Virus record (IMG/VR): IMGVR_UViG_3300047445_000186
Coordinates: 248,001-312,000 of that record
Length of the DNA stretch: 64,000 bases
Reading direction: 5' to 3' (one strand)
The notes beneath the pieces were generated by a model that was not told the origin of the DNA, ran no database searches, and saw only the letters and a program-made list of their open reading frames with translations. Positions 5,317 through 46,900 of this stretch are shown in pieces; within the stretch, counting starts at the first letter, position 1; each line of letters opens with the position of its first letter. The position numbers and the translations under genes are program-made.

Positions 5317-5799
5317 TCAGCACTCCTGAGTTTCCTTGTAGTACTCATCCTCGATGAACGCGTGGTAATCGGCGAACGCGTCACCATCGACCTTGCGGTA
5401 CGTGTACCCGTTCAGCTTCCAGCGCTTTATGAACCTGTTGTACAGCTTCGCTCTGCTCGGGCCCTTTGTCTTGTCTGCTTCGAAGAACACGACTGATGGC
5501 TTGAGCATCTTGAGCGCATCCTCAAGGAATTTCTTCGCGGCTGCGAAGATCGCGAGCTGATCACCATCCCCCGTGGCGTCGTACGTTTCGCCATCTTCAT
5601 TGTAGCGATCGTCGTCCTCATCGTCCTCGCCATCGCCTAGTTGGACGAATGTGAAGTTCCATTTGCTGTCGTCCGGCCACCTGTCCATTCGAAATTCAAT
5701 CTCGCGGCCACCGAACTTGGCTCGAGCCCGGTAGGATTTCCCATTGTCTTTTACGACAGTGAGAGTGGTGTTCGTGTTCAGGATTTCGAAGATTTTCAT
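5317..5799 (-). CDS. Late hypothetical protein with MKIFEIL leader
   Basis: Minus strand TAAATA-GGAG-T-ATG directly upstream. Confidence 0.75.
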   Translation of the reverse strand: MKIFEILNTNTTLTVVKDNGKSYRARAKFGGREIEFRMDRWPDDSKWNFTFVQLGDGEDDEDDDRYNEDGETYDATGDGDQLAIFAAAKKFLEDALKMLKPSVVFFEADKTKGPSRAKLYNRFIKRWKLNGYTYRKVDGDAFADYHAFIEDEYYKETQEC

Positions 5800-16774: not shown

Positions 16775-17218
16775 ATGCGACGTCTGCAGCGACAAGCAGT
16801 AAATAGACCAAACACACGGTCTACTATGTCGCCTACTCAAACCCGAGCGGTTCTAATTCGTCAAGCTGCGTGCGCCGTCCAGGCGCTAGACGCGGATCTG
16901 AACCATCTTCTCGACGCGTACGATTTCTACGTGCAGCGTTTCCCAGATGACAAGGAACTCGCCGATCTGAACGTTTCGATCGACGCTCTCGGCTCGCTTC
17001 CCCTGATCGTTGCGCATCAGCTCACGCACTGGGCGCAGAACGAAAAGTCAGAACTCTCGAGAGATGCTTTCGAGATTGGCGTACTGAACGAATTCTCGCT
17101 CCACATGTTCGCGCTCACGAACTTCATGGAGCGGAAGAACGTTGATGTTCAAGATGTCGTGCCTGAGAAAGTGGCCGACGCTTTCAACGCGCTGAAACTC
17201 ACGAACACAATCCTATGA
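16775..17218 (+). CDS. Hypothetical protein (alternative start 16826 behind late promoter)
   Basis: AAGGA SD at first ATG; TAAATA 16800 plus hairpin before second ATG. Confidence 0.65.
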   Translation: MRRLQRQAVNRPNTRSTMSPTQTRAVLIRQAACAVQALDADLNHLLDAYDFYVQRFPDDKELADLNVSIDALGSLPLIVAHQLTHWAQNEKSELSRDAFEIGVLNEFSLHMFALTNFMERKNVDVQDVVPEKVADAFNALKLTNTIL

Positions 17219-17580
17219 AAGTCACCGAACTGCTTGAGAGCGGCGGTGACCTGCGCGCGAAACTGATCGACAAGATGCGACTCCAGTTCGAGAGGAACGG
17301 GAAGTACATCAATTGTCGCCTTGCTGTGCAGCTCACGGTCGATGTTCCAAAGCTCGAAGAACTGCCGAAAGTGAAGCCGAAAGAGATGATTCTCGGCGAC
17401 ATTCTCGCTTGGGGAATCGCGCACTTCGCGATCTACCTCGGGAACGGCGAAGTTCTCGAAGTCCCAGGCTGGGGCGATCAAGTACAAATCACGCCTTTGA
17501 AGGCCGTTGAAGCGGATTACGACAAGGTCCGCACTGTTTACCGAGTTCCTGCAGATCAACTGCAGAAAGCCCTACAATGA
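17215..17580 (+). CDS. NlpC/P60-like cysteine hydrolase with MKVTELLE leader
   Basis: INCRLAVQ (Cys) then GDILAWG.AHFAIYLGNG (His). Confidence 0.7.
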   Translation: MKVTELLESGGDLRAKLIDKMRLQFERNGKYINCRLAVQLTVDVPKLEELPKVKPKEMILGDILAWGIAHFAIYLGNGEVLEVPGWGDQVQITPLKAVEADYDKVRTVYRVPADQLQKALQ

Positions 17581-18110
17581 AACTACAAGAACTAGCTAGC
17601 GCAGAGCGCTTTAATTCCACCACGCTGCTTGAAAGCGGCAACGCAGCCCTGCGCGCGAAACTCACTGATGATGAGTGCTTAGTTCTTGCGTTATTGATTC
17701 ATGATAAGGGGCACATCATGGCCCGCGGTAATCATGACAGCGATTTAGATAGCGCGATCAGCAAGCTAAAGATGAAGTCTACTATCCCACTTTATCGTGG
17801 CGTGTCTGATAAGGAGTTAGCAGAGATTATCGCTGGTGAAGCTGATCACTATCTCTCCTTCTCAGAAGATCGAAATGTTGCAAAGGGTTTTGGCGCGAAT
17901 GTGATTACGCTAAAGCCTGGGGCTGTGGGTCTCTGTTACTGGAAATGGGGAATCGCAGATAATAAAGCGCTCGCGAAAAAGTATGGCAAGCAATGGGCTG
18001 AGGACCAGGATATTCAGTACATGATCGATTCATTTGAGGAAGAGAAAGAGTGGGTGTTCCCGTTTGAGACACGGTTCACCCAAGTCGGACCTCTAGAGTT
18101 CAAGCAATGA
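17577..18110 (+). CDS. ADP-ribosyltransferase-like protein (R-S-E type) with MKLQEL leader
   Basis: LYRG, YLSFSED, EEEKEW. Confidence 0.75.
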   Translation: MKLQELASAERFNSTTLLESGNAALRAKLTDDECLVLALLIHDKGHIMARGNHDSDLDSAISKLKMKSTIPLYRGVSDKELAEIIAGEADHYLSFSEDRNVAKGFGANVITLKPGAVGLCYWKWGIADNKALAKKYGKQWAEDQDIQYMIDSFEEEKEWVFPFETRFTQVGPLEFKQ

Positions 18111-19363
18111 AACTACAAGAACTAGCTGGTGCAAAGCGCTTTAATTCCACTGAGGGCGGTGGGATCACCGACGCTCTCGATCTTCTTCAAGCCGAATTCG
18201 AAGCTGGCAGAACGTCGCTTCGCATTCTCGGCACTGGCGCGAACGGCGTTGCCCTGACGAATGGCACGAGCGTTTTCAAGTTCTGGCATCGCGATAGCTC
18301 GTACGAGAAGTTCGTGAATTTCTGCCACGAAAACAACAGCCCATTCCTGCCGAAGTTCACGTCAAAGATCAAGAACCTTTCTCCTCGCGTTTTCTATACA
18401 GCGACTGCTGATGAAGACGGCGAGAACATCGTGAAGGGCGTGAAGTACGTGAAGATGGAACTCCTGAAGCCGTACAAGGGCCAAGGCGGTTGCGAGGTCT
18501 GGGCGGACAAGAACATCCAAAAGGCGATCGGTGTTGACGACCCTGAGCTGGATGAGTACGGTGTCGTGAACTTCATGTCGTACGAAGACATCTGGAATTG
18601 CTCAGGTATGTCACGCACTCCTCGCGGCGCATTGATGGAGCTCTTGAGTCATCATGCCTTCCTGAATGATCATCTCGAGTACGAAGAACTGGTTCCATAT
18701 CTCGAGAAGATGAACCGCGAGATCATCGACATGGTCGGTGTTCTCGTGAAGCTTCATACGGTCTTTGGCAAGGAAGATCGACTGGATTTCGGCCCTCGGA
18801 ACATGGCGCTTCGTGGAGACCAAGTCGTGATTCTCGATCCTATCGTGAACGACAATGACATCATCGTGAACAACATGATCATGGACTTGTCGAAGTACCG
18901 GACGCCGCCGAAGATCCAAGAGAGTACCGACACCGATGCCGAGCGTGAAGCTGTCGATGAGTGGATTGAAGCCGCTTATCTTGACGAGCCAGTGATGCGG
19001 AAGTTCCTGATGAAGGGGCTCCCTTCGTTTGGCGAGAAATGCTATCGAGCAGAGTTCGGCTCGAAGGCCAAGAAGTTCAAGGCGCTTCCGATTGGTGAGG
19101 ACGTGGACATGTCATACAAGTCGGCTTCGGCGTCGATGGCTGCGCTCAATAACGGCGTGATCGAGCCGAACGGTGGTGAGCACTGGCTGCTCGAGCTTCG
19201 TATTCCAAGCGGGCTGCGCTGCGGTCGAGACATCAAGCACAGCGATCCCGAGCATCCCGAGAACGTGCAAGAGGAATTCTTGATCGGCCCGGGTGTGAAG
19301 TTCAAGATCATGAAGCAGCTCGCGGATCGAACGATTCTCGTTGCACAGAACTCCATGCACTAA
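18107..19363 (+). CDS. Protein kinase-like domain fused to C-terminal ADP-ribosyltransferase domain
   Basis: LGTGANG, VFK, DFGPRN, ILDP; then CYRA, YKSAS, VQEEFLIGPGVKFKI. Confidence 0.78.
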   Translation: MKLQELAGAKRFNSTEGGGITDALDLLQAEFEAGRTSLRILGTGANGVALTNGTSVFKFWHRDSSYEKFVNFCHENNSPFLPKFTSKIKNLSPRVFYTATADEDGENIVKGVKYVKMELLKPYKGQGGCEVWADKNIQKAIGVDDPELDEYGVVNFMSYEDIWNCSGMSRTPRGALMELLSHHAFLNDHLEYEELVPYLEKMNREIIDMVGVLVKLHTVFGKEDRLDFGPRNMALRGDQVVILDPIVNDNDIIVNNMIMDLSKYRTPPKIQESTDTDAEREAVDEWIEAAYLDEPVMRKFLMKGLPSFGEKCYRAEFGSKAKKFKALPIGEDVDMSYKSASASMAALNNGVIEPNGGEHWLLELRIPSGLRCGRDIKHSDPEHPENVQEEFLIGPGVKFKIMKQLADRTILVAQNSMH

Positions 19364-19389
19364 ATAGAGTTCGAACACGAGAACCGATC

Positions 19390-20679
19390 ATGAAAGTCAA
19401 CGAACTATTTGAAGCCCGTCAGCTCCGTGAAGGATCCTGGTACGACGACTTCCGCCCAGAAGATACCGTCCCGTCCCAAAAAGACAAGGGATGGACGGGT
19501 CGTCATAAGGTGAAGGAAGACGACGGAGAGACGTACGAAGACCTGAAGTATGAAGGTCGAATTCTTCTCCATTACGATGCTCCTATCAAGACGCATGGTC
19601 TTGATCAAGCAGCCGTTAAAGAGGCCTATGAGAAAGCGAAGGCTAAATTCTTGGAAATTCGTGCCGCGCATCCAACGCAGCTTCGCTTTAAGACTTCCGT
19701 TGAAGCCACAAAGTACATGAAGACGATGGAGTACCCTGGTTGGACTCTCGTCGTGCAGTATGCAAGGCTGAACTGGGGATCCGGAGGATACAAGTACGCA
19801 CAAGACCTCGAGTACAAGACGCCTCGCAAGGTTAAGACGCTCGACTTGCCAAAGCAAGAGTTCAAACCAAAACACGCCGAGAACGCGATCAATGCGGAAA
19901 TGGACGGCGATAAGGTCAAGCTCAGCATTGACGTGAAGGTCGGTCCTCTGATGTCTGCATTCATCACGACGGTTTATAACGTCGGCGATAAAATGAAGGC
20001 AAAGATTCTTAACGTTAAGGGCAAGGTCCTTGACTATGATGATCTCTATCGCTCACGCCCACAGAAAGTTTGGGTGACCACTACTGATCTGGATCGTGTG
20101 AAGGCGATCATCGCGAAGAAGCATGCTGACCGCGTTGAGGATGAGAAGGCAGATCACGACAAACTGCAGAACGCTTTGACTGACCGCAAAGAAACCAGCA
20201 AATGGCGAGCTGACGATCAGAAGCAGCGAAAGGCTAAACTCCACGCAACATACGGTAAGGAAATCGTCGATCGTGTGAAGATCAAGTCTATGAGCATGGA
20301 AGGTGATGATGGTTATCAATGGGCTCTGTTCGTTGATGGACGGCGCAAGAAGTCAGGTCTGACTAAGTATCAAGCAGAGGGTGAGCAGCGTATCATGTGG
20401 CGCTGGCTGAAAGAGTACGAGGACATGACTCCTGAGCAGCGGCTGCAGCACGCTCAAGAACTTGAAGGTATTCGCCTGTACTTCATGATGGACGCGATTG
20501 AGAAGTCAGTTGGCGCGCAACTTCCACAGTATCTGAACGCGATCAAGAAGAATGCGAAGGACTTCGTTGATGCGAAGCAGGCAACTAAGGACGCGATCGA
20601 AACTTCGAAGGTCTCTGACGCTCAAGCAAAGAGCATCTTTAATGACCTGATGAAGCGCATGGGCGACAAGCTGGACTGA
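19390..20679 (+). CDS. Late hypothetical protein, probable internal head protein (MKVNELFE leader)
   Basis: TAAATA 19361; highly charged; LFE/LRE sites near N-terminus. Confidence 0.7.
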   Translation: MKVNELFEARQLREGSWYDDFRPEDTVPSQKDKGWTGRHKVKEDDGETYEDLKYEGRILLHYDAPIKTHGLDQAAVKEAYEKAKAKFLEIRAAHPTQLRFKTSVEATKYMKTMEYPGWTLVVQYARLNWGSGGYKYAQDLEYKTPRKVKTLDLPKQEFKPKHAENAINAEMDGDKVKLSIDVKVGPLMSAFITTVYNVGDKMKAKILNVKGKVLDYDDLYRSRPQKVWVTTTDLDRVKAIIAKKHADRVEDEKADHDKLQNALTDRKETSKWRADDQKQRKAKLHATYGKEIVDRVKIKSMSMEGDDGYQWALFVDGRRKKSGLTKYQAEGEQRIMWRWLKEYEDMTPEQRLQHAQELEGIRLYFMMDAIEKSVGAQLPQYLNAIKKNAKDFVDAKQATKDAIETSKVSDAQAKSIFNDLMKRMGDKLD

Positions 20680-20797
20680 TCCCGAAATCCGAGTGCACTC
20701 GGACTCCTCCGTGATTAAATAAGAACTGGTGCTGATGAGGCACCTTTTCTTTTACCTGCGAACAGTGGGTACCTATCACAACCTCGGAGTACGAGAC

Positions 20798-21613
20798 ATG
20801 TCAGACCGCACCACCATCGGTGATCGGATGAAGAGCTACGAAGCGCCTTCAACGACCCGCAAAGCTTTCAAGGGCCAGCCCCTCATTGTCCGCCTGGACG
20901 GAAGCTCATTCCACAAATTCACCAAGGGCATGAAGCGCCCATTCGATCTGGTTCTGAGCCAGCTCATGATCGACACCATGAAGTCCATGGTCGAGCGATA
21001 CAACGCGAACATCGGGTACACGCAATCGGACGAGATCACGCTCGCCTGGTACATGGAGCCATTCGAATCTCGCGAGCTCGAGTTCGGTGGCCGCTTCCAG
21101 AAGTTCGAAAGCGAACTTGCTGCATGGTGTTCTGTGAAGTTCAACTCGCTCCTTCGCGAAACCGAGTACGCCAAGAAGGCAGAGATGCTGCCGTACTTCG
21201 ATGCTCGCGCGTTCGTCGTGCCGAACTTGACCGAAGCGATGCACTGCTTCCTGTGGCGCCAGCAAGATTGCACGAAGAACGCGATCAGCATGGCCGCTCA
21301 GTCGATGTTCTCGCACAAGGAACTGCAAGGGAAACATGGGCCTGAGATGCAGGAGATGATGTTCCAGAAGTTCAACGTGAACTTCAACGACTACCCTTCG
21401 CACTTCAAGCGTGGCACGTTCGCTCGACGCGTGAAGCGCGAGTGGTTCCCGTCCGATGCAGAGATCGAAGCGATTCCGGAGAAATACCGGCCAAGTGGGC
21501 CAATCCTCCGCTCGTTCGTGCAGACCGAAGACATCTGGCTATCGAAGCAACCGAGCGGAACGCAAGCTCTGTTCGGTGACGCACCGATCGTTACAAATGT
21601 TACGGTGTCATGA
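20798..21613 (+). CDS. tRNA(His) guanylyltransferase Thg1-like protein
   Basis: RMKSYE, IVRLDGSSFHKF, YTQSDEITL, FDAR, WRQQDC..NAI. Confidence 0.92.
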   Translation: MSDRTTIGDRMKSYEAPSTTRKAFKGQPLIVRLDGSSFHKFTKGMKRPFDLVLSQLMIDTMKSMVERYNANIGYTQSDEITLAWYMEPFESRELEFGGRFQKFESELAAWCSVKFNSLLRETEYAKKAEMLPYFDARAFVVPNLTEAMHCFLWRQQDCTKNAISMAAQSMFSHKELQGKHGPEMQEMMFQKFNVNFNDYPSHFKRGTFARRVKREWFPSDAEIEAIPEKYRPSGPILRSFVQTEDIWLSKQPSGTQALFGDAPIVTNVTVS

Positions 21614-22560: not shown

Positions 22561-22590
22561 CGAGGGACCCTAGGGTCCCTCGGCTGTTTC
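22561..22590. terminator. Bidirectional terminator, 22-bp perfect palindrome
   Basis: CGAGGGACCCTAGGGTCCCTCG between convergent genes. Confidence 0.8.
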
Positions 22591-22604: not shown

Positions 22605-23261
22605 TTAGCCGCGGCTGATATCGATGATTGCGTCCTTCGCTGCATCGGCACCGAGCGTGGTACGGATGAACGAGCGGATTGCCGAGTCTTGCAGAGCACC
22701 CTTGGTCGGGAGCAGAACTGCGTGGACTGAAGAGCCCATGCCAGCAGAACCCTTCTTGACCTTGTTGTGCACGTTGTTACCGAGCGAGCCGGCGAACTTC
22801 TTCTGGATCGCAGCAAGGAGAGCTTGAGCGGCGGTGCGGTCAAGGTTCTGAACTTCGATCGAGAACGATGGACCTTCGTGGAAAGCTTCTTCCAGAGCTT
22901 CGTAAGCGCGGCGGCCAGTCTGATTCTTTGCCTTCAGGTCGTTCACCTTGTCTTGCTTTGCGAGAACCTTGCGATCGCGCGAATCAAGAACATCATCCCA
23001 ATCTGCATCGTCGTTCGCACCAGCGGCCTTAGCTGCAGGGGTGACCTTCTTCTTGTCGCCAGCGGCCCAAGCAGCCAGAGCTGCGTCGAGCTCTTTCTTC
23101 TTCTCTGAGCTCATGCCCTTCAGACGTTCGCGTTCCTTCTTGAGCTTGTCAAGCTTGGCGTTATTGCGGAACAACCCGAAGATTTCGTTGATCTGTTCGT
23201 CAGAGAGTTCATCGCCGGTCTCGACGAATTCGTTGAACTTCTTGAAGGAAACTTTTGACAT
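22605..23261 (-). CDS. Late protein, probable internal head protein
   Basis: TAAATA 23296; N-terminus SFKKFNEFVE resembles T4 capsid-targeting sequences. Confidence 0.7.
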   Translation of the reverse strand: MSKVSFKKFNEFVETGDELSDEQINEIFGLFRNNAKLDKLKKERERLKGMSSEKKKELDAALAAWAAGDKKKVTPAAKAAGANDDADWDDVLDSRDRKVLAKQDKVNDLKAKNQTGRRAYEALEEAFHEGPSFSIEVQNLDRTAAQALLAAIQKKFAGSLGNNVHNKVKKGSAGMGSSVHAVLLPTKGALQDSAIRSFIRTTLGADAAKDAIIDISRG

Positions 23262-35711: not shown

Positions 35712-36596
35712 ATGCGTCTCGACGAACTCGCCGGTGTAAAGAAATTCCAGCGACTACAGTGGCATCAAATCACGCGTCTGCTTGATCGGAAATTCGGCAT
35801 CAAATACATTGGTGGCGGAAAGTACGGTCAGGTTTTCACGCACCCGGGCTGGGACTACGTCGTGAAGATCATGGAGCGCGAGGACCCGAACTATCTGGAG
35901 TTCGTTGACTTCGCGCTGAAGCATCCAGACAAGCATTATCCGAAGATCATCAAGAAGCCTTTCATGATGCACGCTTTTCACAAGCGTGAACGCAGCCAGA
36001 AGTACCAACGTCTGACTGTCCTGAAGATCGAGAAGCTTCTCCCGATCGAGAAGAACAAGCTTGACTTCATTGTTCAGAACCTGGATCAATACGCCAGCAT
36101 CGTCACTCGGTACAAGAACAACGAGTACAAGCACGAGAAGAACCAAGAGGCGTACACGCAAAAGCATCCACACCACACGAAGGTCTTGCCTGACGGCACA
36201 AGTGAACAGAACCTGTCGTACAAGGACATCTTCGATCGGTACCCATGGTTCGAGGATCTGTGCTGGGCATTCCGCCGGATCATGGACAACTCGGAGTACG
36301 GGTCGGCCGATATCCATGGTGGGAACTTCATGGAGCGGAAAGACGGCACCGTCGTGATCATCGATCCGCTGTGGGAAGGATACAACTTCGAAGCTGCTGC
36401 ATGGCAGGCCGAGATGGCTGAACGCGGCGACTACTGGGGCGACTACGAAGAGCACATCCCAATGGTCAGCGGCCCCGGGTATGACAGTGCACGCAAGCGT
36501 GAAGAACAAGAAGCGCTCGAGAAGAAGGAAGCCGAAAAGGCGGCCAGGATTGCTGGCGTGTTCGCGCACAATTTCGACGACGATATTCCGTTCTGA
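35712..36596 (+). CDS. Protein kinase-like protein with MRLDELAG leader and SSB-like C-terminal tail
   Basis: IGGGKYG, VVK, DIHGGN, IIDP; ends NFDDDIPF; TAAATA 35683. Confidence 0.8.
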   Translation: MRLDELAGVKKFQRLQWHQITRLLDRKFGIKYIGGGKYGQVFTHPGWDYVVKIMEREDPNYLEFVDFALKHPDKHYPKIIKKPFMMHAFHKRERSQKYQRLTVLKIEKLLPIEKNKLDFIVQNLDQYASIVTRYKNNEYKHEKNQEAYTQKHPHHTKVLPDGTSEQNLSYKDIFDRYPWFEDLCWAFRRIMDNSEYGSADIHGGNFMERKDGTVVIIDPLWEGYNFEAAAWQAEMAERGDYWGDYEEHIPMVSGPGYDSARKREEQEALEKKEAEKAARIAGVFAHNFDDDIPF

Positions 36597-39209: not shown

Positions 39210-39279
39210 GGGCTTTAGAGTCATACTTCTCGCTGCTAAATAGTCCTCAGAGGGCCACGTCGTGGCCGCAGAGGACTCC

Positions 39280-40503
39280 ATGACATCTCCGGTCGATACA
39301 TCCGTCAAATCTTTCGATAGCACCATGCTCGGTGCTCCAGCCCTGAGTGGTACTGCTGGCACCACAATTGGCGTGCTTGATGCTTGCTTGGTGAACGGGT
39401 TCGACACACGTGCTGCTTCATCTATCGTTGTTTCAGGTGGTGTGGCTACGGTGAGCTACTCGGGTGCAGTGCACTCAGCTCGGTTGAACAGCGTTATTCT
39501 CGTGTCTGGCGTGACTGACATCACGTCGTTGAATGGTGAACAGAAGATCACGGCAGTCGGTTCTGGCTTCGTGAAGTTCGCGACAGCGGCCTCGCCAGGT
39601 ACCGCAACCGGCACGATCTCGTTTAAGATGGCTCCACTCGGATGGGTGAAGCCCTTCAATGGTACCAATATCGGCGTGTACCAGTCGAGTGACATCACGT
39701 CAACAAAGTGCTACCTTCGCGTTGACGATACTGGTACCCAGACATGCCGCGTTATGGGGTACGAAACCATGACTGACGTGAACACTGGACTTGGTGGATT
39801 CCCGCTGTCTGGTCAGATTCTTGGTCCTGTCACAGGTGGTGGTTGGTGGTACAAGAGCGCTCAGGTCAACTCGACCCCAGTTGTGTGGTCTATTCACGGT
39901 GACGGCAAGATCTTCTACATCAACATTCAGATGGGAACTAGCACGAACGCCTCGTATCAAATGACGTCTGGGCGTGTGTTCGGTGATCCAATTCCGTACA
40001 GACCTGGCGGCGATCCATACTGCTGCATTTTGAACTATGCCACTGCATCTGGTGGTATGGCCGGTGGTGTTGGAAATACGTACAGCTCATCTGCAAATTG
40101 CTCATTCGCGACACCTCGCGATTTCACTGGAATTGGATCCGCAGTTGGGAACTTCTTGATGCAGTTCGGAATCCCAGTAGGCTCTAACTCAAATTCAGGA
40201 ATTACGAACTTGGCTGGGGCATTCCCATCGTACATCGATGGAAGTCTTTGGTTGTTCCAGAAATTTCTTGCCGCAACTTCAACTGGCATGCCGCGGGCGC
40301 TCATGCCAGGTCTTTATATTTGCGGGCAGTCTAGCATCTATAACAACTTTAAGCAGGGCGATACGACCCCAGGCACAGGTGCTCTTGCTGGTCGATGGCT
40401 ACGTGCAGCAACGTCAAATGATGATGCAACCGTGCCGAACACGGCAAGCACAACGGCGAACACAGGTATCATTTTCTTTGATGACACTGGGCCGTGGAGA
40501 TAA
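39280..40503 (+). CDS. Tail-fibre-associated structural protein, paralog A1
   Basis: MTSPVDTSVK..LDACLVNG..APLGW..DDTGPWR; late promoter 39237. Confidence 0.75.
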   Translation: MTSPVDTSVKSFDSTMLGAPALSGTAGTTIGVLDACLVNGFDTRAASSIVVSGGVATVSYSGAVHSARLNSVILVSGVTDITSLNGEQKITAVGSGFVKFATAASPGTATGTISFKMAPLGWVKPFNGTNIGVYQSSDITSTKCYLRVDDTGTQTCRVMGYETMTDVNTGLGGFPLSGQILGPVTGGGWWYKSAQVNSTPVVWSIHGDGKIFYINIQMGTSTNASYQMTSGRVFGDPIPYRPGGDPYCCILNYATASGGMAGGVGNTYSSSANCSFATPRDFTGIGSAVGNFLMQFGIPVGSNSNSGITNLAGAFPSYIDGSLWLFQKFLAATSTGMPRALMPGLYICGQSSIYNNFKQGDTTPGTGALAGRWLRAATSNDDATVPNTASTTANTGIIFFDDTGPWR

Positions 40504-40506
40504 ACA

Positions 40507-42720
40507 ATGGCTGCGCATCGATACTGGCGCATCACTGGTCTTGAGGCCTTTGCAGGTGCAGATCTTGAACTGAGTGAATTTCAGCTCCTGAACGGTGCCA
40601 CTCGCGTTGATGCGTCTGCAACGCTCACATGCTCAAACTCACCAGCAATTGGCGCAGTTGCGAACATCCAAGATAACAATCTGAGCACGTCTGCGTACTG
40701 GCAAAAGGCATCTCTTGTCGGGCTTACGCTGAACTGGGACTTTGGTGGATCGCCGACTCAGGTGAATGATATTCGGATTGCTGGTGGTGACAGCGCACTG
40801 ACGTTCCCGCTGTATGCTCGGCTAGAGTACTCGGACGATAACGTTGCGTGGATCGTGCAGTACACGTACGGTGGTATCACCTGGCCAGGCCCGCGCACGC
40901 TGACTTCATCTGGGACATTCTTGACTAATGGCGGGGTATGCACCTGCTTGTTGCACTTCGACGGTGTGAACGGTGCTACCACAACAACTGACAGCAGCTC
41001 AATCGGGGCGACCGTCACGTTCAACGCGATGGCAATTTCCACGACCTTGTCGATCTATGGTGGCTCTTCACTGTCTCAAACTGGAGCTCGCGGGTACATT
41101 AGTCTACCAGCTAATACTGCGTACGTGCCAGCGGGCGATTTCTGTATCCAGGGCTGGTTCCGAAATGCTGCAGCGGGTGGCGGCAGTACCCTTGTTTTGT
41201 ACGTCAAGGGATCAATTTCGGTCTATTCTTACTTGGTATTTGTGAATGGCAACGGGTATCTGCAGGCCAACATCTTCGGCACCGGCGGCAGCGTTGCGCT
41301 GCTCGCCCCTTCACTATGGGCAACAAATACCTGGTGTCATGTTGCGGTGACTAGACAAGGTAACGTTTTTAGACTGTTCGTGAATGGTTTAATTGTAAGC
41401 ATAATCACGGCGCCGAGTTCATTTGGCGCCTTAGTCGCTAGCGCAGGTCCCCTCAGTCTCGCTAATGACACGGCGGGGACATATGGTTGGGGCGCTGTTC
41501 CTGGCTATATCGACGAATTTCAAATCATTAATGGCGCGGCAATTTACACGCAGGCCTTTACTCCGCCAGCCGCCCCCTCAACTGCTACCGCAATTGACCA
41601 AGTTCAAGGTATTCTTCAGAACCTCGGCGGTGGCCGCGTAGCGAGCGGGAACAATCTCGTTCTCCCAAGCGTGATTGGGAGTTCCCTGGCGTCATATGGC
41701 GCGAGCAGTCAACCGCCGAGCGCGTTCATTCGTGGTCGAAGAGACTACGTGTACAACGCGAATGGATACCAAGGTCTCATTGACGGGATCGTCGATTACA
41801 AGGCGACCCCGTTTAATGTGCCTGTCTCGCGGCGCGTCCGGCTTCACCGACAGGCAGATGGTTTGTTGATCCGCGAAGTGTTCAGTGATCCAATCACTGG
41901 CGAGTACAAGTTTGATTACATTGACGAGACACAGAAATACTTTGTGTGCAGTCTCGATCACACTGGCGCTTTCCGTGCCGTGATCAGCGATAATCTGACA
42001 CCGACAATTATGAGTGGTGCACCGATCGCGTATCCACCTGCGCACTACAGAAGCGTCGGTCCTGTGGCAACGTACCAGGCCGGGCCGGGCACTACAGTTG
42101 TCCCTAGCACTCCTACTGGGATGACTGTTGGTGATCTCATGATTGCCAGCATTGCGAACATGATCTGTACCGTGACGCCTCCAGTAGGATGGACATTGGT
42201 GAATTCGTACAGCATGAATAATGGCGCAAACACCCAACAGGTTATGCTAAGTGTGTACAGCAAGTATGCGACCTCTGCAGACGTTGCTATTGCGGCGCAT
42301 ACTTTCAGTTTCAGCGCCACGAGTACACAGGGCGCAACTGGAGTTATCACCGCGTTCTACAACCCAGCAGGGCTTCCAGTTGTTGTTGACACGTCTGCAG
42401 TGAACGGGTATTTGGTCGGGAATGCATCCACCCCACCACAGCAGTCGCAGACGATGATTTTCACGCCAATGCGAGTAACGAACAATAATTCGCACATCAT
42501 GCTCGTTACCGCTCAAGCGTTCATGGGTACAACGTTCAATGCAGGCACAGGTCTGATTCTCAGAGCAGGAAGTACAGCAGGCGGGATCGGTGTCTGCACA
42601 GGTACCAGCAATCTGCAAAGCGGGTATGAGAACGGCGTTGGGTACAATGGGTACATGATGACATGGAATAACGTCGCGACGCAGCCGGCGATCGGCATTG
42701 GTCTGATTTTGACGACATAA
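40507..42720 (+). CDS. Tail fibre / receptor-binding protein B1 with LamG-like domain
   Basis: MAAHRYWR start; WCHVAVTRQGNVFRLFVNG..GYIDE. Confidence 0.75.
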   Translation: MAAHRYWRITGLEAFAGADLELSEFQLLNGATRVDASATLTCSNSPAIGAVANIQDNNLSTSAYWQKASLVGLTLNWDFGGSPTQVNDIRIAGGDSALTFPLYARLEYSDDNVAWIVQYTYGGITWPGPRTLTSSGTFLTNGGVCTCLLHFDGVNGATTTTDSSSIGATVTFNAMAISTTLSIYGGSSLSQTGARGYISLPANTAYVPAGDFCIQGWFRNAAAGGGSTLVLYVKGSISVYSYLVFVNGNGYLQANIFGTGGSVALLAPSLWATNTWCHVAVTRQGNVFRLFVNGLIVSIITAPSSFGALVASAGPLSLANDTAGTYGWGAVPGYIDEFQIINGAAIYTQAFTPPAAPSTATAIDQVQGILQNLGGGRVASGNNLVLPSVIGSSLASYGASSQPPSAFIRGRRDYVYNANGYQGLIDGIVDYKATPFNVPVSRRVRLHRQADGLLIREVFSDPITGEYKFDYIDETQKYFVCSLDHTGAFRAVISDNLTPTIMSGAPIAYPPAHYRSVGPVATYQAGPGTTVVPSTPTGMTVGDLMIASIANMICTVTPPVGWTLVNSYSMNNGANTQQVMLSVYSKYATSADVAIAAHTFSFSATSTQGATGVITAFYNPAGLPVVVDTSAVNGYLVGNASTPPQQSQTMIFTPMRVTNNNSHIMLVTAQAFMGTTFNAGTGLILRAGSTAGGIGVCTGTSNLQSGYENGVGYNGYMMTWNNVATQPAIGIGLILTT

Positions 42721-42769: not shown

Positions 42770-43975
42770 ATGACATCTCCAGTAGATACATCCGTAAAAT
42801 CATTCGACTACTCAATGTTGGGAGCGGCTGCCCTGAGCGGCACGGTCGGCTCGTTGTTGCCAATTCTTGACCAATGCCTGGTGAATGGGTTTGACACTCG
42901 AGCAGCGTCAAGCATTGTCGTTTTTGGCGGGATCGCGACAGTAAGCTACACCGGCATTACGCACTCTGCGCGTTTGAACTCGGTTATTCTCGTGACTGGT
43001 GTGACTGACCTTACGGCCCTGAACGGAGAACAGAAGGTCACCGCCGTCGGCTTCGGTTTCATTAAGTTCGCAACCAGTGTTGCGAACGGTACCGCGACCG
43101 GTACGATCTCGTTCAAGATGGCTCCACTTGGATGGGCGATTGCGCAGACAGGTACTAATCTTCGCGCGTACAAATCGACCGATGTTACATCGACCGGCTG
43201 CATTCTTCGTGTCGACGACACCGTTGCCACGTCGTGCCGTGTCGTTGGATACGAAAGTATGACCGACATCAATACTGGTCTTGGCGCATTCCCGACTGCT
43301 TCGCAACAGCCTGGCGGCGGGTACTGGGTGAAGAGCATTACGGCCTCGGCGGGTACTGTCCTCTGGTCTATCCATGGGGATGGGAAGGTGTTCTACCTGA
43401 ATGTTCAGCCTGGTAGCGTTTCTGGCGCAGGTTTTCAGATCACTTCTAATCGTATGTTCGGAGACATTATTCCGTTCAAACCGGGTGGTGATCCTTATGC
43501 GTGCGTAATGAACTACTCGATCACGTCAACGATTGGCGCGATGCACGACGCCGGTGTTGGTGGGTCGGCTGTCACTCAGTTCGCTCAACCACGCGACTTC
43601 ACGGGGCTTGGATCAGCGGTGATCTCGTTTATCTACCCGTACAACGGCACGACTCTGAACACAATTTCCGGCATTACCTCGATTGCAGGTCCATTCCCAT
43701 CTCAGGTAGATGGTGGCATTTGGTTGAGCTCAAAGTATCTGAACACCACCACCAGCGTTGGCATGCGTGGTCAGCTTCCAGGCGTATTGCACTGTGGTCA
43801 GAGCGGGGTATGGGCCTCGTTTAAAATGGGTGACACGACGCCCGGCTCTGGCCCCCTCGCCGGGCGTTCGCTGCGCGCTACAACAGCAGGGCACGATACG
43901 ACAGGTAGTAACACCACCTCGTCAACTGCAAACACCGGGATCATGTTCTTCGACGACACTGGGCCTTGGCGATAA
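42770..43975 (+). CDS. Tail-fibre-associated structural protein, paralog A2
   Basis: Colinear with A1; late promoter 42730. Confidence 0.75.
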   Translation: MTSPVDTSVKSFDYSMLGAAALSGTVGSLLPILDQCLVNGFDTRAASSIVVFGGIATVSYTGITHSARLNSVILVTGVTDLTALNGEQKVTAVGFGFIKFATSVANGTATGTISFKMAPLGWAIAQTGTNLRAYKSTDVTSTGCILRVDDTVATSCRVVGYESMTDINTGLGAFPTASQQPGGGYWVKSITASAGTVLWSIHGDGKVFYLNVQPGSVSGAGFQITSNRMFGDIIPFKPGGDPYACVMNYSITSTIGAMHDAGVGGSAVTQFAQPRDFTGLGSAVISFIYPYNGTTLNTISGITSIAGPFPSQVDGGIWLSSKYLNTTTSVGMRGQLPGVLHCGQSGVWASFKMGDTTPGSGPLAGRSLRATTAGHDTTGSNTTSSTANTGIMFFDDTGPWR

Positions 43976-43978
43976 GCA

Positions 43979-46900
43979 ATGGCTACGCACAGATATTGGC
44001 GCGCTAAAAATCTTCAGGCGTACGGCGCAACCGGCCTAGACATCACTGAGTACCAGCTTTTTGTTGGCAGCACACGTGTTGACGGCCCGGCGACGCTCAC
44101 CTCCAACATCGCGCCATCAACTGGTTCATTGTCATATCTGCAGGACGGGCTAGCTACGAACAGCGCAATCTGGCTAGCAGCTGATGTTCCCAAACTCGTG
44201 CTCTCGTGGGACTTTGGTTCGACATCCGGTAACTGGGTTGATGTGAATGACATTCAGCTCGGTGGTGGCGCGCTTCGGCAGAATTTTCTGGCGTTCTCCA
44301 CTCTTCAGTACTCGGATGATGCCAGCACTTGGACAGATGCATTCATTAGCACTACGAACGGCTATGTTGCGGGTGCGTACGCGTGGCCTGGAAGTTTTAC
44401 GGCCACCACGAGTAGACCATTCTCGTACAATAGTCTGACAGTGTTGCTTCACGGTGATGGTACTGACGGTGGGACCACGTTCACGGATAGCTCAACGAAC
44501 GCATTCACGGTCACCCCCACAGCTACAACAACAAGTGCAACGCAGAAAAAGTTTGGTACGACTGCGCTTTCGTTCAATGGCGCGACCTGTAAGCTGTTGA
44601 TCGCGCACAACAATGCGTTGGTTCCGAGTGGAGATTTCTGCATTCAGTGTTACGTATGGGTTGCTTCTGCGACGGCTGCGACTCATCGATTCATCGTGAA
44701 CAAATCGATCTCAAGTGGAGTCTGTCCATACGCATTTGCTGTGATGTCGACAGGTGTGTTGTCTGCTAATTCATACAACGCGGCTGGCACGTCGATGGTG
44801 AACTTCACCGCGACTCAGTTAATCACAGCTCAGACTTGGACACACGTAGCGTTCACACGTCAGGGCTTGATTTACCGTATTTTCATGAATGGTCAAATCG
44901 TTGCGCAGGCAACGGCGCCATCAACTGGCGCGCTGTACAACAACAATACGCACCCGATGTGTATTGGGAACGTGTCAGACAGCATTTACCCTATGTTTGG
45001 AACAGGTGGTACCGGGTACATTGACGAGTTCTCATTTGATGCGAACAACGCTGTGTACACTGCGCCATTCATTCCACCTGCGGCTCCAGGCTCAGGTGGT
45101 GGAATCGTGCTTACGAACAATTTCGCGATCTCATCTCCGACTGAGCCGTCTACGGTAGGAAATGGTGTATCATCGTATGGCGTATCAGCGGTGTCAATTG
45201 CGCCGGAAACGGTCGCAGATGTTATCGCCATGTCAGCGCCAACAGTGTACGGTGTAGCTCCACCTCCAGTTTTCTTTGGTGTCAGCACGACATTGATGCT
45301 CTCATATGGTGCTGGACTGCGAGCGCCTAATAACACGCGTGGTCGAAATGATTTCGTCACTGGTGTTCTCGGCTCTGGCGTCGGACGAATCGACGGTGTT
45401 GTGCAAGTTCCTGGTACGCCAAATCAGCCAGTGAAGCGTCGTGTTCGTCTGTACAGGCAAGAAGACGGATACCTTGTGCGCGAGGCCTGGAGTGATTCAA
45501 GCACTGGGGCGTTCTCATTTGACTACGTTGACGAGAAACAGCTGTACTACATCTGCGCATTTGACCACACGAATGCGTTCGTTGGGCTGATCGCTGACAA
45601 CTTAACGCCATCCCTGCTTGAAACTTCTACTGTTGACGCATACGCAGGTGCTCTGAAGAGACTGATCACGATCACTGGCGCAGGTGGTGCAGGTACAGGA
45701 TACGCTATGTTGTTCAAGATTGGGGAGAGCAGCGGTTCTGCCGGCTCCGATTTCAACCTTGAAGCTGTTACAACGACGTTCCCACTTGATAAGAACATCC
45801 CTGGCGATGTGCAGTTCACTGACGTCAGTGGAAGCCCGCTTCCACAGTGGGTCGAGCAAGTCACCGGGACGGCACCGAATCGTGTTGCATGGTTCTGGGT
45901 TAAAGTTTCGGCCGATCTGAGTACAACGCAGTCGATTTACTGCACGTACCGGAATGGTATGAGCACCGCAAGCAATGGCAATACCGTGTTCCTGTTGTTC
46001 GATGACTTCGATGACGGCACGCTCGATACTGGAAAGTGGTCGAACGTCACTGGATCAGGCAGTTATGTAATCTCCGGTTCTGAATTCGTACTCACCGGTA
46101 CTGGTGTTGGTCGCGCGCTTTATTCGGCCACGACGTTCGGTGATGGAATGGAAGTGGTTGGTAAGGTCGGACCATCGGCTACCTCGCTGAGCTACAACGG
46201 TAAGTTCGGTTTCGAAACGCAGTACATCTTCCAAAATGACTGGGACAGCCAAGGATCATCGGAAGTTGTAGTTGGCCCATCGACTAAGACACAACTTGAC
46301 GCGCGCTATCAGACCACGTATTACAGAATGCGAATCCGGCGTGCGGGTGGCGCAGGTAGCATGTTGGTCAATGACGTGGTGAAGCATACACAAGGTTCTG
46401 GGATTGGGACTTCATCTGTGCCAGTTTGGCTGATGAACGTGTATGACGCCACTGTTGCCGGTAAGGTTGATTGGATCGCAGTCAAGAAGTACATGCTCAC
46501 CGAGCCTACGTACTACTCGGCCGACACCTCCATTCCTGCGGCGACTACCGTGATCAACATGACTTTCGATACCGGGAACGGTTCGACTACGTTCACGGAT
46601 ACTGGTTCACAAGCATCAAGTTGGCAGATCGGTACGGGCGCGGTTCAGTGTTCGACGACAGCGGTTCTTGAAGGCGTTTCATCGCTCTTTGTTCCTGGTG
46701 GTGGCTTCGCCTATCTGTACACTACAGCGTACTCCGCGAACATGCTTCCAGCTACCTCAGACTTCTCGCTGAAATTCAAGGCGCGTTCGTCGTCATGGCT
46801 GCGCTTTGACGCTTCTGGGTGCTATTTGATCTCGATTCAGGGCGCGGTAGGAAATGGAGCAGACACGCAATTCGCGATCGCAACGAATCTGAATACATAT

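What the first reader, a model, noticed from the sequence alone, without database searches (positions are those of the whole stretch)
16775..20679. Candidate capsid-delivered effector cassette: NlpC/P60, ART, kinase-ART, unknown
Four consecutive late genes start MKVTELLE, MKLQELASA, MKLQELAGA and MKVNELFE, each leader joined to a different enzyme. Known: T4 internal proteins and Alt (an ART) carry short N-terminal capsid-targeting peptides removed by prohead protease after L/I-x-E. Inference: a polymorphic locus of host-modifying enzymes packaged and injected with DNA, analogous to secretion-signal plus toxin cassettes. Best candidate for an undescribed system in this window.
Basis: partly seen in the sequence, partly recalled or inferred. 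Interest (0 to 1): 0.85.

Follow-up and report, generated by a model that had tools for sequence, protein, structure and literature searches.

The report
Leader-tagged late effector cassette, jumbo phage
Four neighbouring late genes of an uncultivated jumbo phage carry a short shared N-terminal tag on four different enzymes; it looks like phage T4's tag for loading proteins into the capsid for injection, but packaging is not shown.

Summary
In 64 kb, only four ORFs begin MK[VLI]x[ED]L, and they are adjacent (17215-20679, + strand). The first three are coupled by ATGA overlaps.

- **Transcription unit:** two copies of TAAATAG frame the genes, and a terminator-like hairpin follows them. The window holds 11 copies of TAAATAG against 1.1 expected. 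In the nearest cultured relative, RsoM2USA, this motif precedes portal, neck and baseplate genes.
- **Cargo:** an NlpC/P60-like hydrolase, an R-S-E ADP-ribosyltransferase, a kinase-fold domain fused to an ART-like domain (by motif only), and an unknown 429-aa protein.
- **Leader:** it is a portable peptide module. MKVTEL[LF]E heads proteins of at least 10 unrelated families (Acb1, a deaminase and others) on about 20 phage contigs, with free synonymous variation. It resembles the protease-removed N-termini of T4 gp24 and Alt.
- **Clade context:** the clade has a T4 gp21-type prohead protease. It also puts T4 internal-protein-like targeting peptides (xTFKQFLxE) on virion proteins confirmed by mass spectrometry. 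Both leader types mix in the same clusters and families.

Packaging of these four proteins is not shown. The best reading is a T4-style capsid-targeted effector cassette: a new variant of a known kind, not a new system.

The parts
16800..16806 (+). Late-promoter-like motif TAAATAG, 20 nt upstream of the ATG at 16826
   Evidence: The window holds 11 copies against 1.12 expected, and 0 of 100 shuffles reach 11. All lie 4-40 nt upstream of start codons. In RsoM2USA the same motif precedes portal, neck, baseplate-hub and virion-protein genes.
16826..17218 (+). First gene of the operon, 130 aa, no leader, function unknown
   Evidence: A gene call on the close relative L177 gives 130 aa at 100% identity. 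The only family hit is a sub-threshold Pfam match to IMEF_Flp, E = 0.052.
17215..17580 (+). 121-aa protein: leader MKVTELLE (17215-17238), then a minimal NlpC/P60-like papain-fold domain
   Evidence: Matches cover only the His-containing half of the domain: NCBIfam NlpC_P60_DIP1281 with local E = 2.4e-9 over residues 52-96, PDB RipA-like chains down to 4e-5, and Pfam NLPC_P60 at 19.3 bits, below its cut-off of 23. Candidate triad C34/H70/E81 was read from the sequence. The ATGA overlaps with both neighbours.
17577..18110 (+). 177-aa ADP-ribosyltransferase with a composite leader (about 17577-17633)
   Evidence: PHROG 832 'RNA polymerase ADP-ribosylase', 2.6e-7. tblastn matches Erwinia jumbo-phage genes annotated the same way, 2e-14. 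The R (PLYRG), S-x-S (LSFS) and E-x-E (EKEW) motifs are conserved in that alignment. The first 45 nt are 41/45 identical to the start of the next gene, and the following block is shared with the 121-aa gene.
18107..19363 (+). 418-aa fusion: leader MKLQELAGAKRF (18107-18151), kinase-fold domain (about 18194-18892), ART-like domain (18914-19360)
   Evidence: AlphaFold pLDDT is above 90 for residues about 40-260. Foldseek matches APH(2'') and CDK2/CHK1 with probability 0.99-1.0. G42, G44, K58, D227, N232 and D244 are invariant or nearly so in 28 sequences. The C-terminal domain family has invariant R, S(TS) and QxE, but no Pfam or PDB sequence match.
19361..19367 (+). Second TAAATAG late-promoter-like motif, 22 nt upstream of the ATG at 19390
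   Evidence: It is conserved in the close relative L177.
19390..20679 (+). 429-aa protein of unknown function with leader MKVNELFE (19390-19413)
   Evidence: The five homologues keep MKV/IxE/QL(F/L)xE at the N-terminus, followed by a variable stretch. No Pfam, PHROG or NCBIfam hit. AlphaFold mean pLDDT is 72, with no significant PDB fold match. In a related contig the orthologue lies between the tail sheath and terminase genes.
20728..20754 (+). Terminator-like hairpin plus T-run that closes the unit
   Evidence: The Thg1 domain of the next ORF starts at its residue 32, so that gene probably starts near 20798.
35712..36596 (+). Second kinase-like gene (294 aa) with the same kind of N-terminus, MRLDELAGVKKF, outside the cassette
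   Evidence: It is homologous to the N-lobe of the 418-aa protein. PHROG 15752 protein kinase, 2e-10.
22605..23261 (-). 218-aa lysine/alanine-rich protein starting MSKVSFKKFNEFVE, resembling the clade's T4-internal-protein-like targeting peptide
   Evidence: No convincing family hit. This is a candidate internal protein 2 kb from the cassette.

Best explanation
The region is one late transcription unit: promoter motif at 16800, then the 130-, 121-, 177- and 418-aa genes, a second promoter motif at 19361, the 429-aa gene, and a hairpin at 20728. It belongs to an uncultivated 332-kb myovirus-type jumbo phage distantly related to T4 (XacN1/RsoM2USA group).

Four of its five products start with a short amphipathic peptide, M-K-(V/L)-x-E-L-(L/F/A)-x-E, followed by a poorly conserved or low-confidence stretch and then a different enzyme.

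I infer that this peptide works like the T4 capsid-targeting sequence:
1. It docks the newly made protein onto the scaffolding core of the prohead.
2. The gp21-type prohead protease removes it after a (L/I/V/F)-x-E site. Candidate sites are LLE8, LFE8 and LQE5 or LLE19.
3. The mature enzymes stay in the head and enter the next host cell with the DNA, before any phage gene is expressed.

Once inside, the ART and the kinase-ART would modify host proteins or nucleic acids, as T4 Alt does. The papain-fold hydrolase would cut a peptide or peptidoglycan substrate. The role of the 429-aa protein is unknown.

Shown: the anatomy, the promoter motif, the portability and N-terminal specificity of the leader, and the cargo folds. 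Inferred: docking, cleavage, packaging, injection and targets.
For: 1. **The leader is a peptide-level module.** A back-translated search for MKVTE(L/F)(L/F)(D/E) in IMG/VR gave 25 loci.
   - About 21 of them lie at ORF starts, many on contigs of 100-340 kb, and several as adjacent gene pairs.
   - The cargos fall into at least 10 different PHROGs and into Pfam Acb1, dCMP deaminase, DUF6321 and NlpC/P60.
   - Codons vary synonymously and the upstream DNA is unrelated. The residue after E8 is mostly A, S, G or N.
2. **It is specific to N-termini.** In 1.6 Mb of related head-module loci, 59 of 3515 first-ATG ORFs match, against 8 of 9880 internal ATGs. Observed against expected from position-independent composition is 26 against 1.5, 35 against 1.4 and 6 against 0.25.
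3. **It is not a general feature of late genes.** Tail and baseplate genes driven by TAAATAG in the window and just beyond it lack the leader.
4. **It resembles leaders known to be removed in T4.** T4 gp24 begins MAKINELLRE and Alt begins MELITELFDE. Both lose N-terminal propeptides to gp21.
5. **The clade has the machinery.**
   - A gp21-type protease is present in RsoM2USA, XacN1 and 57 related contigs.
   - RsoM2USA virion proteins ORF89, ORF132 and ORF438, identified by mass spectrometry, begin (K/L)TFKQ(F/Y), like the T4 IPIII targeting peptide MKTYQEFIAE.
   - Tandem arrays of such genes sit beside head genes.
6. **The two leader types are interchangeable in context.**
   - A related contig holds at least 10 genes with one or the other leader between tail sheath and terminase, including the orthologue of the 429-aa protein.
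   - Kinase homologues P0005 and P0013 carry the TFKE(F/Y)L type in front of the usual LDELAG.
   - One RsoM2USA paralogue family has members of both types.
7. **Same cargo, different leader.** The Erwinia phage ART and both of its neighbours share a different leader, MEL(F/M/L)(I/V)SLS.
8. **Late expression is likely.** TAAATAG motifs are present, and gp55-like late sigma factors occur in the relatives.
9. **The leaders are not part of the folds.** The N-terminal residues have pLDDT below 50 in both models.
Against: - No virion proteomics, N-terminal sequencing or transcript data exist for this phage. Its protease and head genes lie outside the window and could not be fetched.
- In RsoM2USA, the ten abundant virion bands include TFKQF-type proteins but no MK(L/V)xE(L/I)-type protein. 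Only abundant bands were analysed.
- The MKLxELxGxK N-terminus is nearly invariant across the whole stand-alone kinase family (E5, L6, G8 and K10 at 90% or more). It may therefore have a role tied to the kinase itself.
- RsoM2USA has about 45 paralogues starting M(K/R)LxEI. Packaging all of them seems a lot, which hints at a more general role for the motif.
- The enzymes found in XacN1 virions (lipase, M23 peptidase) lack either leader.
- The leader is 2 residues shorter than the 10-residue minimal T4 targeting peptide.
Confidence: 0.55

Rival explanations
1. The genes encode late-expressed enzymes that act in the producing cell, for example on lysis, the host envelope or host shut-off. The shared N-terminus is a non-packaging signal, such as a short helix that favours translation start or stability, or a docking site for a phage chaperone or regulator.
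For: - The kinase family keeps the MKLxELxGxK N-terminus in all of about 26 stand-alone homologues, as if it were part of the protein's own function.
- A second kinase with the same N-terminus sits among replication genes without a TAAATAG motif.
- A family of about 45 members in RsoM2USA shares MKLxEI.
- No MK(L/V)xE(L/I) protein was among the abundant RsoM2USA virion bands.
Against: - Free synonymous codon variation and unrelated upstream DNA argue against an RNA-level or initiation effect.
- The leader is absent from other TAAATAG-driven late genes.
- It co-occurs in clusters and families with the T4-like TFKQFL leader, which is present on virion proteins.
- The orthologue of the 429-aa protein lies inside a structural module.
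- The (L/F)xE triplet is kept even when E5 changes.
Confidence: 0.2
2. The proteins are virion-associated and delivered, but not through a cleaved, T4-type core-targeting peptide. The leader might stay on and dock the proteins to the portal, neck or tail lumen, or act as an ejection signal.
For: - The leader (8 residues) is shorter than, and different from, the clade's own TFKQFLxE peptides.
- In XacN1, enzymes are packed into virions without either leader, so other routes exist.
- The orthologue of the 429-aa protein lies next to tail genes.
Against: - Tail and baseplate proteins in the window lack the leader.
- The leader resembles the cleaved N-termini of two T4 head proteins, gp24 and Alt.
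- The (L/I/F)xE followed by a small residue fits gp21-type cleavage.
Confidence: 0.15
3. The shared starts are only a relic of local tandem duplication and recombination within this phage and carry no function.
For: The starts of the 177-aa and 418-aa genes are 41/45 nt identical. The 177-aa gene also shares a second DNA block with the 121-aa gene.
Against: - The same peptide heads unrelated proteins in many other phages, with different codons.
- Orthologues at 35-66% identity keep it.
- The enrichment is specific to N-termini across the whole clade.
Confidence: 0.04

Closest known systems
T4 capsid-targeting sequence (CTS) proteins: IPI, IPII, IPIII and Alt, processed by prohead protease gp21
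   Same: - A short N-terminal leader ending in (L/I)-x-E on otherwise unrelated proteins.
- Late expression.
- An ADP-ribosyltransferase among the cargos.
- The phage belongs to the wider T4-like group, and its relatives have a gp21-type protease and a gp55-type late sigma factor.
- The leader resembles the N-termini of Alt and gp24.
   Different: - The leader is 8 residues, MK(V/L)xEL(L/F)E, not MKTYQEFIAE.
- The clade also has a separate, more T4-like TFKQFLxE leader.
- The cargos are mostly enzymes (kinase, papain-fold hydrolase, Acb1, deaminase) rather than small basic proteins.
- The genes form one operon.
- Packaging and cleavage are untested.
Hypervariable internal-protein loci of T-even phages (diverse injected anti-restriction proteins sharing only the CTS)
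   Same: A conserved leader on exchangeable cargos that differ between related phages. Signs of recombination at the leader.
   Different: - Seen here in a jumbo-phage clade known mostly from metagenomes.
- The locus is identical in a 97% relative.
- Variation is seen only between distant relatives.
Ejection and inner-body proteins of phiKZ, 201phi2-1 and SPN3US
   Same: Giant phages that package many proteins, including paralogue families, with propeptides removed after Glu by a gp21-related protease.
   Different: Those propeptides are mostly 100 residues or longer, and the cleavage motif is (A/S/G)-x-E. That clade is a different one, with nucleus-forming phages that carry a virion RNA polymerase.
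MuF-fused and polyvalent head-packaged effectors (Iyer, Aravind and co-workers)
   Same: - They predict delivery of ART, 2H/Acb1-like and other enzymes from the phage head.
- The ART-like domain of the 418-aa protein also occurs inside proteins of 837 and 2374 aa, and fused to ParB-like and topoisomerase IB domains.
   Different: No MuF or portal fusion here. Targeting would rest on an 8-15 residue peptide rather than on a structural domain.
Phage P1 Dar anti-restriction proteins
   Same: Head-packaged proteins injected to protect or assist the incoming DNA (title and abstract only).
   Different: Unrelated proteins and a different incorporation hierarchy. Not examined further here.
Bacterial polymorphic toxin and secretion-signal cassettes
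   Same: The logic of a conserved targeting module joined to variable enzymatic 'warheads'.
   Different: No secretion system, no immunity-gene pairing was shown, and the destination is a capsid. This is an analogy only.

Membership tests
T4-type CTS / internal-protein system | Short N-terminal leader containing a (L/I)-x-E protease site, on proteins unrelated beyond the leader | tested here: met
   Candidate sites are LLE8, LFE8, LQE5 and LLE19. The cargos are unrelated to one another. The LFE site is kept in orthologues.
T4-type CTS / internal-protein system | The phage encodes a gp21-family prohead protease | tested here: inconclusive
   Present in RsoM2USA (ORF379), XacN1 (ORF297) and 57 related contigs. 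The window phage's own head module was not retrieved.
T4-type CTS / internal-protein system | Late expression together with head genes | tested here: met
   By motif only. TAAATAG lies at 16800 and 19361. The same motif precedes structural genes in the window and in RsoM2USA. There are no transcript data.
T4-type CTS / internal-protein system | The protein is present in the mature head with the leader removed | not testable with these tools
   This needs virion mass spectrometry. The only clade data cover abundant bands (RsoM2USA), which show TFKQF-type proteins only.
T4-type CTS / internal-protein system | The leader is sufficient to package a foreign protein | not testable with these tools
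   This needs a leader-reporter fusion experiment.
R-S-E ADP-ribosyltransferases (Alt/VIP2-like): 177-aa protein | Arg, Ser-x-Ser and Glu-x-Glu motifs in order, with family-level sequence similarity | tested here: met
   The motifs are conserved against the Erwinia phage homologue. PHROG 832 matches at 2.6e-7 and tblastn at 2e-14. Pfam ADPrib_exo_Tox scores only 15.7 bits against a cut-off of 23.4.
R-S-E ADP-ribosyltransferases: C-terminal domain of the 418-aa protein | ART fold or significant similarity to a known ART | tested here: inconclusive
   Invariant R, S(TS) and QxE in a 13-member family. There is no Pfam or PDB sequence match, hhalign against the 177-aa ART gives probability 0.3, and the AlphaFold model is below pLDDT 50 in this region.
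Protein-kinase-like fold: N-terminal domain of the 418-aa protein | Bilobal kinase fold with Gly-rich loop, beta-3 Lys, catalytic Asp...Asn and metal-binding Asp | tested here: met
   Foldseek matches APH(2'') and CDK2/CHK1 at probability 0.99-1.0, E down to 1e-4. G42, G44, K58, D227, N232 and D244 are conserved. The substrate, protein or small molecule, is unknown.
NlpC/P60 papain-fold hydrolases: 121-aa protein | Family similarity above the curated threshold, and a Cys-His-polar triad | tested here: inconclusive
   Only the His-containing half matches: NCBIfam local E = 2.4e-9, PDB 4e-5, and Pfam 19.3 bits against a cut-off of 23. C34 is a plausible nucleophile by position only.
MuF-fused / polyvalent head effectors | Fusion to MuF, portal or another head structural domain | tested here: not met
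   No such domain in any of the four proteins.

The most novel reading that the evidence does not exclude
MK(V/L)xEL(L/F)E may be a second, 8-residue class of capsid-targeting peptide. If so, it marks a large and so far unrecognised repertoire of capsid-delivered enzymes across a mostly uncultivated clade of T4-related jumbo phages. That repertoire would include ARTs, protein-kinase-like enzymes, papain-fold hydrolases, the anti-CBASS nuclease Acb1, deaminases and an LRR-like paralogue family. In effect it would be a 'signal peptide' for injection, allowing a phage's immediate-early effector set to be read straight from sequence.
Probability: 0.4. Interest if true: 0.75.

Novelty: new variant of a known kind. 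Interest (0 to 1): 0.6.

Why it matters
If the leader does direct packaging, a simple N-terminal pattern would pick out the proteins that these jumbo phages deliver with their DNA. Those proteins act before any phage gene is transcribed, so they are prime candidates for counter-defence and host takeover. An Acb1 anti-CBASS enzyme carrying the leader in RsoM2USA is one example.

It would extend the T4 capsid-targeting principle to a distant, environmentally widespread clade and to enzyme cargos. It would also supply a very short tag for loading foreign proteins into large capsids. RsoM2USA is cultivable and carries both leader types, so the idea can be tested directly.

Tried and rejected
- **No GenBank match for the region.** Megablast of the region and tblastn of the 418-aa protein against GenBank phages found nothing.
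- **Thg1 neighbour search.** It returned only the source contig and an unrelated low-GC phage, L002.
- **The four cargos in RsoM2USA.** tblastn found none of them. Only the AAA and Thg1 neighbours matched.
- **Head module of the window phage.** I queried with the RsoM2USA protease and major capsid protein. This gave 57 and 80 related loci, but not the source contig. Walking 10 kb past the window end reached only baseplate, PAAR and M23 genes.
- **Is the 418-aa C-terminal domain an ART?** hhalign against the 177-aa ART, a profile search of PDB sequences, and Pfam scans of it and its homologues were all negative.
- **Fold of the 429-aa protein.** The Foldseek search of its model gave no hit below E = 0.4.
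- **Homologues of the 177-aa ART.** The big protein database held only one 93% relative.
- **More virion identifications.** The RsoM2USA supplements held only the annotation table, and the PA5oct paper had no cleavage data.
- **Explanations considered and rejected.**
  - A Sec or Tat signal: there is no hydrophobic core.
  - An RNA-level element: the codons vary.
  - Membership of the four proteins in the RsoM2USA LRR-like paralogue family: hmmsearch was negative.

Full report
**Source and relatives.**
- The window is part of IMGVR_UViG_3300047445_000186, a 331,776-bp viral contig.
- Its DNA polymerase is closest to that of Ralstonia jumbo phage RsoM2USA (46.8% identity), then to XacN1-like and Rak2-like jumbo myoviruses.
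- These phages share T4-type core genes. RsoM2USA and XacN1 encode a portal, a gp21-type 'prohead core scaffold and protease', a T4-like major capsid protein and a gp55-like late sigma factor.
- The window holds replication genes, three duplicated tail-fibre-like modules, an RNA ligase, PhoH and a Thg1-like enzyme. It has no tRNA genes.

**The observation.**
- A scan of every possible start on both strands finds MK[VLI]x[ED]L only at these four ORFs.
- A looser pattern adds a second kinase-like gene at 35712-36596 (MRLDELAGVKKF) and 5317-5799 on the - strand (MKIFEIL).
- Against the window's own N-terminal composition, 0.25 matches are expected and 6 are seen.
- The 130-, 121-, 177- and 418-aa genes overlap by ATGA, which suggests translational coupling.
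- The start of the 177-aa gene is 41/45 nt identical to the start of the 418-aa gene. It then continues with a block shared with the 121-aa gene (LLESG..LRAKL). Its leader is therefore a mosaic of the other two.

**Transcription unit.**
- TAAATAG occurs 11 times in the window against 1.1 expected, always 4-40 nt upstream of a start codon. Two of the sites are at 16800 and 19361.
- In RsoM2USA it occurs 47 times. There it precedes the portal, neck, baseplate-hub and several virion-protein genes. It also occurs in related metagenomic contigs.
- It resembles the T4 late promoter TATAAATA (my own knowledge), and the relatives have a gp55-type sigma factor. I therefore read it as the clade's late promoter.
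An independent gene call on a 97% relative agrees.
- A hairpin with a T-run at 20728-20754 follows the 429-aa gene.

**Cargo of the four proteins.**
- *121-aa protein.* Only the His-containing half matches NlpC/P60 endopeptidases: NCBIfam local E = 2.4e-9, PDB RipA-like 4e-5, and Pfam below its threshold. A C34/H70/E81 triad is plausible by position.
- *177-aa protein.* It is an R-S-E ADP-ribosyltransferase. It matches PHROG 832 at 2.6e-7 and Erwinia jumbo-phage 'RNA polymerase ADP-ribosylase' genes at 2e-14 by tblastn. The R, SxS and ExE motifs are conserved.
- *418-aa protein, N-terminal part.*
  - It belongs to a family of about 26 stand-alone proteins of 240-280 aa on jumbo-phage contigs.
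  - The AlphaFold model is confident for residues about 40-260. Foldseek places it in the protein-kinase-like fold (APH(2''), CDK2, CHK1; probability up to 1.0).
  - The canonical Gly-loop, Lys, Asp...Asn and Asp residues are conserved.
- *418-aa protein, C-terminal 149 residues.*
  - They form a separate family with invariant R, S(TS) and QxE. Its members are stand-alone proteins, parts of 837-aa and 2374-aa proteins, or fusions to ParB-like and topoisomerase IB domains.
  - That pattern is ART-like, but no profile, PDB or fold evidence confirms it.
- *429-aa protein.* It has five homologues, no family match, and no fold match to a medium-confidence model.

**The leader is a portable module.** A degenerate DNA search for MKVTE(L/F)(L/F)(D/E) in IMG/VR returned 25 loci.
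- About 21 hits are at ORF starts, mostly on phage contigs of 50-56% GC, many of 100-340 kb. Three contigs have two adjacent leader-bearing genes.
- The proteins share nothing beyond the leader (13% mean column identity). They fall into at least 10 PHROGs and several Pfam families, including Acb1 and a cytidine/dCMP deaminase.
- Codons vary synonymously, the upstream DNA is unrelated, and residue 9 is mostly small.
- In RsoM2USA the Acb1 homologue is annotated too short. The full ORF starts MKVTELLDTSKPK, ahead of a complete Acb1 domain.
- Across 1.6 Mb of head-module loci from the clade, the looser motif sits at 59 of 3515 first ATGs but only 8 of 9880 internal ATGs. It exceeds position-independent expectation about 17-fold there, and about 25-fold in RsoM2USA and in the window.
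- Tail and baseplate genes with the same promoter motif lack it.

**Link to capsid targeting.**
- T4 gp24 starts MAKINELLRE and Alt starts MELITELFDE. Both lose short N-terminal propeptides to gp21. The 10-residue leader of IPIII (MKTYQEFIAE) is sufficient for packaging, with residues 4 and 7 needed for targeting and 8 and 10 for cleavage.
- The leaders here share the K-(I/V)-(N/T)-E-L-(L/F) core of gp24 and Alt, and end in L-x-E.
- Orthologues of the 429-aa protein keep LFE even where E5 becomes Q.
- The clade clearly uses T4-like targeting peptides.
  - RsoM2USA virion proteins ORF89, ORF132 and ORF438, identified by mass spectrometry, start (K/L)TFKQ(F/Y).
  - Tandem arrays of genes starting xxTFKQFLxE lie next to the protease and capsid genes in many contigs.
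- The two leader types are mixed together.
  - In contig L098, the orthologue of the 429-aa protein sits between tail sheath and terminase, among at least 10 genes with one or the other leader. One of them is a zeta-toxin/AAA_33-like kinase.
  - Two kinase homologues carry the TFKE(F/Y)L type in front of LDELAG.
  - One RsoM2USA paralogue family has both types. A weak relative of that family, ORF89, is a virion protein.
- In Erwinia phage pEa_SNUABM_7, the ART homologue and both of its neighbours share a different leader, MEL(F/M/L)(I/V)SLS. The same cargo therefore carries a lineage-specific tag.

**What is not shown.**
- There is no evidence that these four proteins are packaged or cleaved.
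- The abundant RsoM2USA virion bands include no MK(L/V)xE(L/I) protein.
- The kinase-type N-terminus is nearly invariant across its family.
- About 45 RsoM2USA paralogues share MKLxEI.
- XacN1 packs a lipase and an M23 peptidase without either leader.
- The window phage's own protease was not seen.

**Polymorphism.**
- A 97%-identical contig has the same five genes in the same order. The only structural change is a lost stop codon that lengthens the ART by 11 residues.
- RsoM2USA has none of the four cargos, and its Thg1 neighbour is a different leader-bearing gene.
- L098 has a different set of leader-bearing genes.
- The content therefore varies between distant relatives but not between close ones.

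**Comparison with what is known, and verdict.**
- Diverse injected proteins that share only a capsid-targeting sequence are established for T-even phages.
- Head delivery of ARTs and 2H enzymes has been predicted from MuF and portal fusions and from gene context.
- Giant phages of the phiKZ and SPN3US type package many proteins with long propeptides.
- What is new here is threefold: a distinct 8-15 residue leader class, its spread over many enzyme families in a mostly uncultivated jumbo-phage clade, and this particular operon.
- I rate it a new variant of a known kind. My confidence in the capsid-targeting mechanism is about 0.55, and interest is 0.6.

Noticed in passing
window 1603, 5810(-), 16800, 19361, 39237, 42730, 49820, 50176, 55675, 56114, 63465(-): TAAATAG occurs 11 times against 1.1 expected, always just upstream of start codons. 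The same motif precedes structural genes in RsoM2USA (47 sites) and occurs in related contigs. It is probably the late promoter of this clade.
   Followed up: partly
window 22605-23261 (-): A 218-aa lysine/alanine-rich protein starts MSKVSFKKFNEFVE, which resembles the clade's T4-internal-protein-like targeting peptide. It is a candidate internal head protein, with a near-match to the promoter motif (TCTAAATA) upstream.
   Followed up: partly
window 35712-36596 (+): A second kinase-like gene (PHROG 15752, 2e-10) has the same kind of N-terminus, MRLDELAGVKKF. It sits among replication genes and has no TAAATAG motif nearby.
   Followed up: partly
window 5317-5799 (-): A 160-aa ORF starts MKIFEILN with TAAATAG only 4 nt upstream of the ATG, so its mRNA may be leaderless or nearly so. 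It gives a weak match to PHROG 16075.
   Followed up: no
window 39262-40503, 42770-43975, 56936-58138 and 40507-42720, 43979-47170: There are three paralogues of PHROG 9998 ('tail assembly'-like) with almost the same N-terminus (MTSPVDTSVK). Two of them are followed by large proteins resembling baseplate-wedge or fibre proteins. These look like duplicated receptor-binding modules.
   Followed up: no
window 20729-21613 (+): A Thg1-like tRNA-His guanylyltransferase (Pfam 1.6e-27). Its true start is probably near 20798, because a terminator-like hairpin overlaps the listed GTG start.
   Followed up: partly
window 22561-22582: A perfect 9-bp GC-rich hairpin lies between convergent genes. It is scored as a terminator on both strands.
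   Followed up: no
L005:29535-30023 (-) (RsoM2USA ORF37): The GenBank annotation is truncated to 91 aa. The full 162-aa ORF is a complete Acb1 anti-CBASS domain (Pfam 2.2e-36) preceded by MKVTELLDTSKPK. It lies directly after virion protein ORF38.
   Followed up: yes
L008 and L009 (RsoM2USA ORF274-344): About 45-50 tandem paralogues of about 200 aa have an LRR-like consensus. Most start M(K/R)LxEI, and a few start MSFKQWL or MRFKKWL. ORF90 and ORF185 are members, and the virion protein ORF89 is a weak relative.
   Followed up: partly
L011:5378-7048 (Erwinia phage pEa_SNUABM_7 gp210, gp209, gp208): Three consecutive genes, the middle one an ART homologous to the window's 177-aa protein, share the leader MEL(F/M/L)(I/V)SLS.
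   Followed up: partly
L098:4725-16565: Between the tail sheath and terminase genes of a related contig lie at least 10 genes starting with either MRFKEFL/TFKEYL/SFKQFM or M(K/R)(V/L)xELxE. One of them is a zeta-toxin/AAA_33-like kinase.
   Followed up: partly
L177:971-1537: In the 97% relative, the ART gene has lost its stop codon and runs 11 codons into the kinase-ART gene.
   Followed up: no
L179:1-10000 (contig beyond the window end): A baseplate module lies on the other strand. It holds an M23/GH108 murein hydrolase, a PAAR-like spike tip and a protein of more than 1600 aa. None of them carries the leader.
   Followed up: partly
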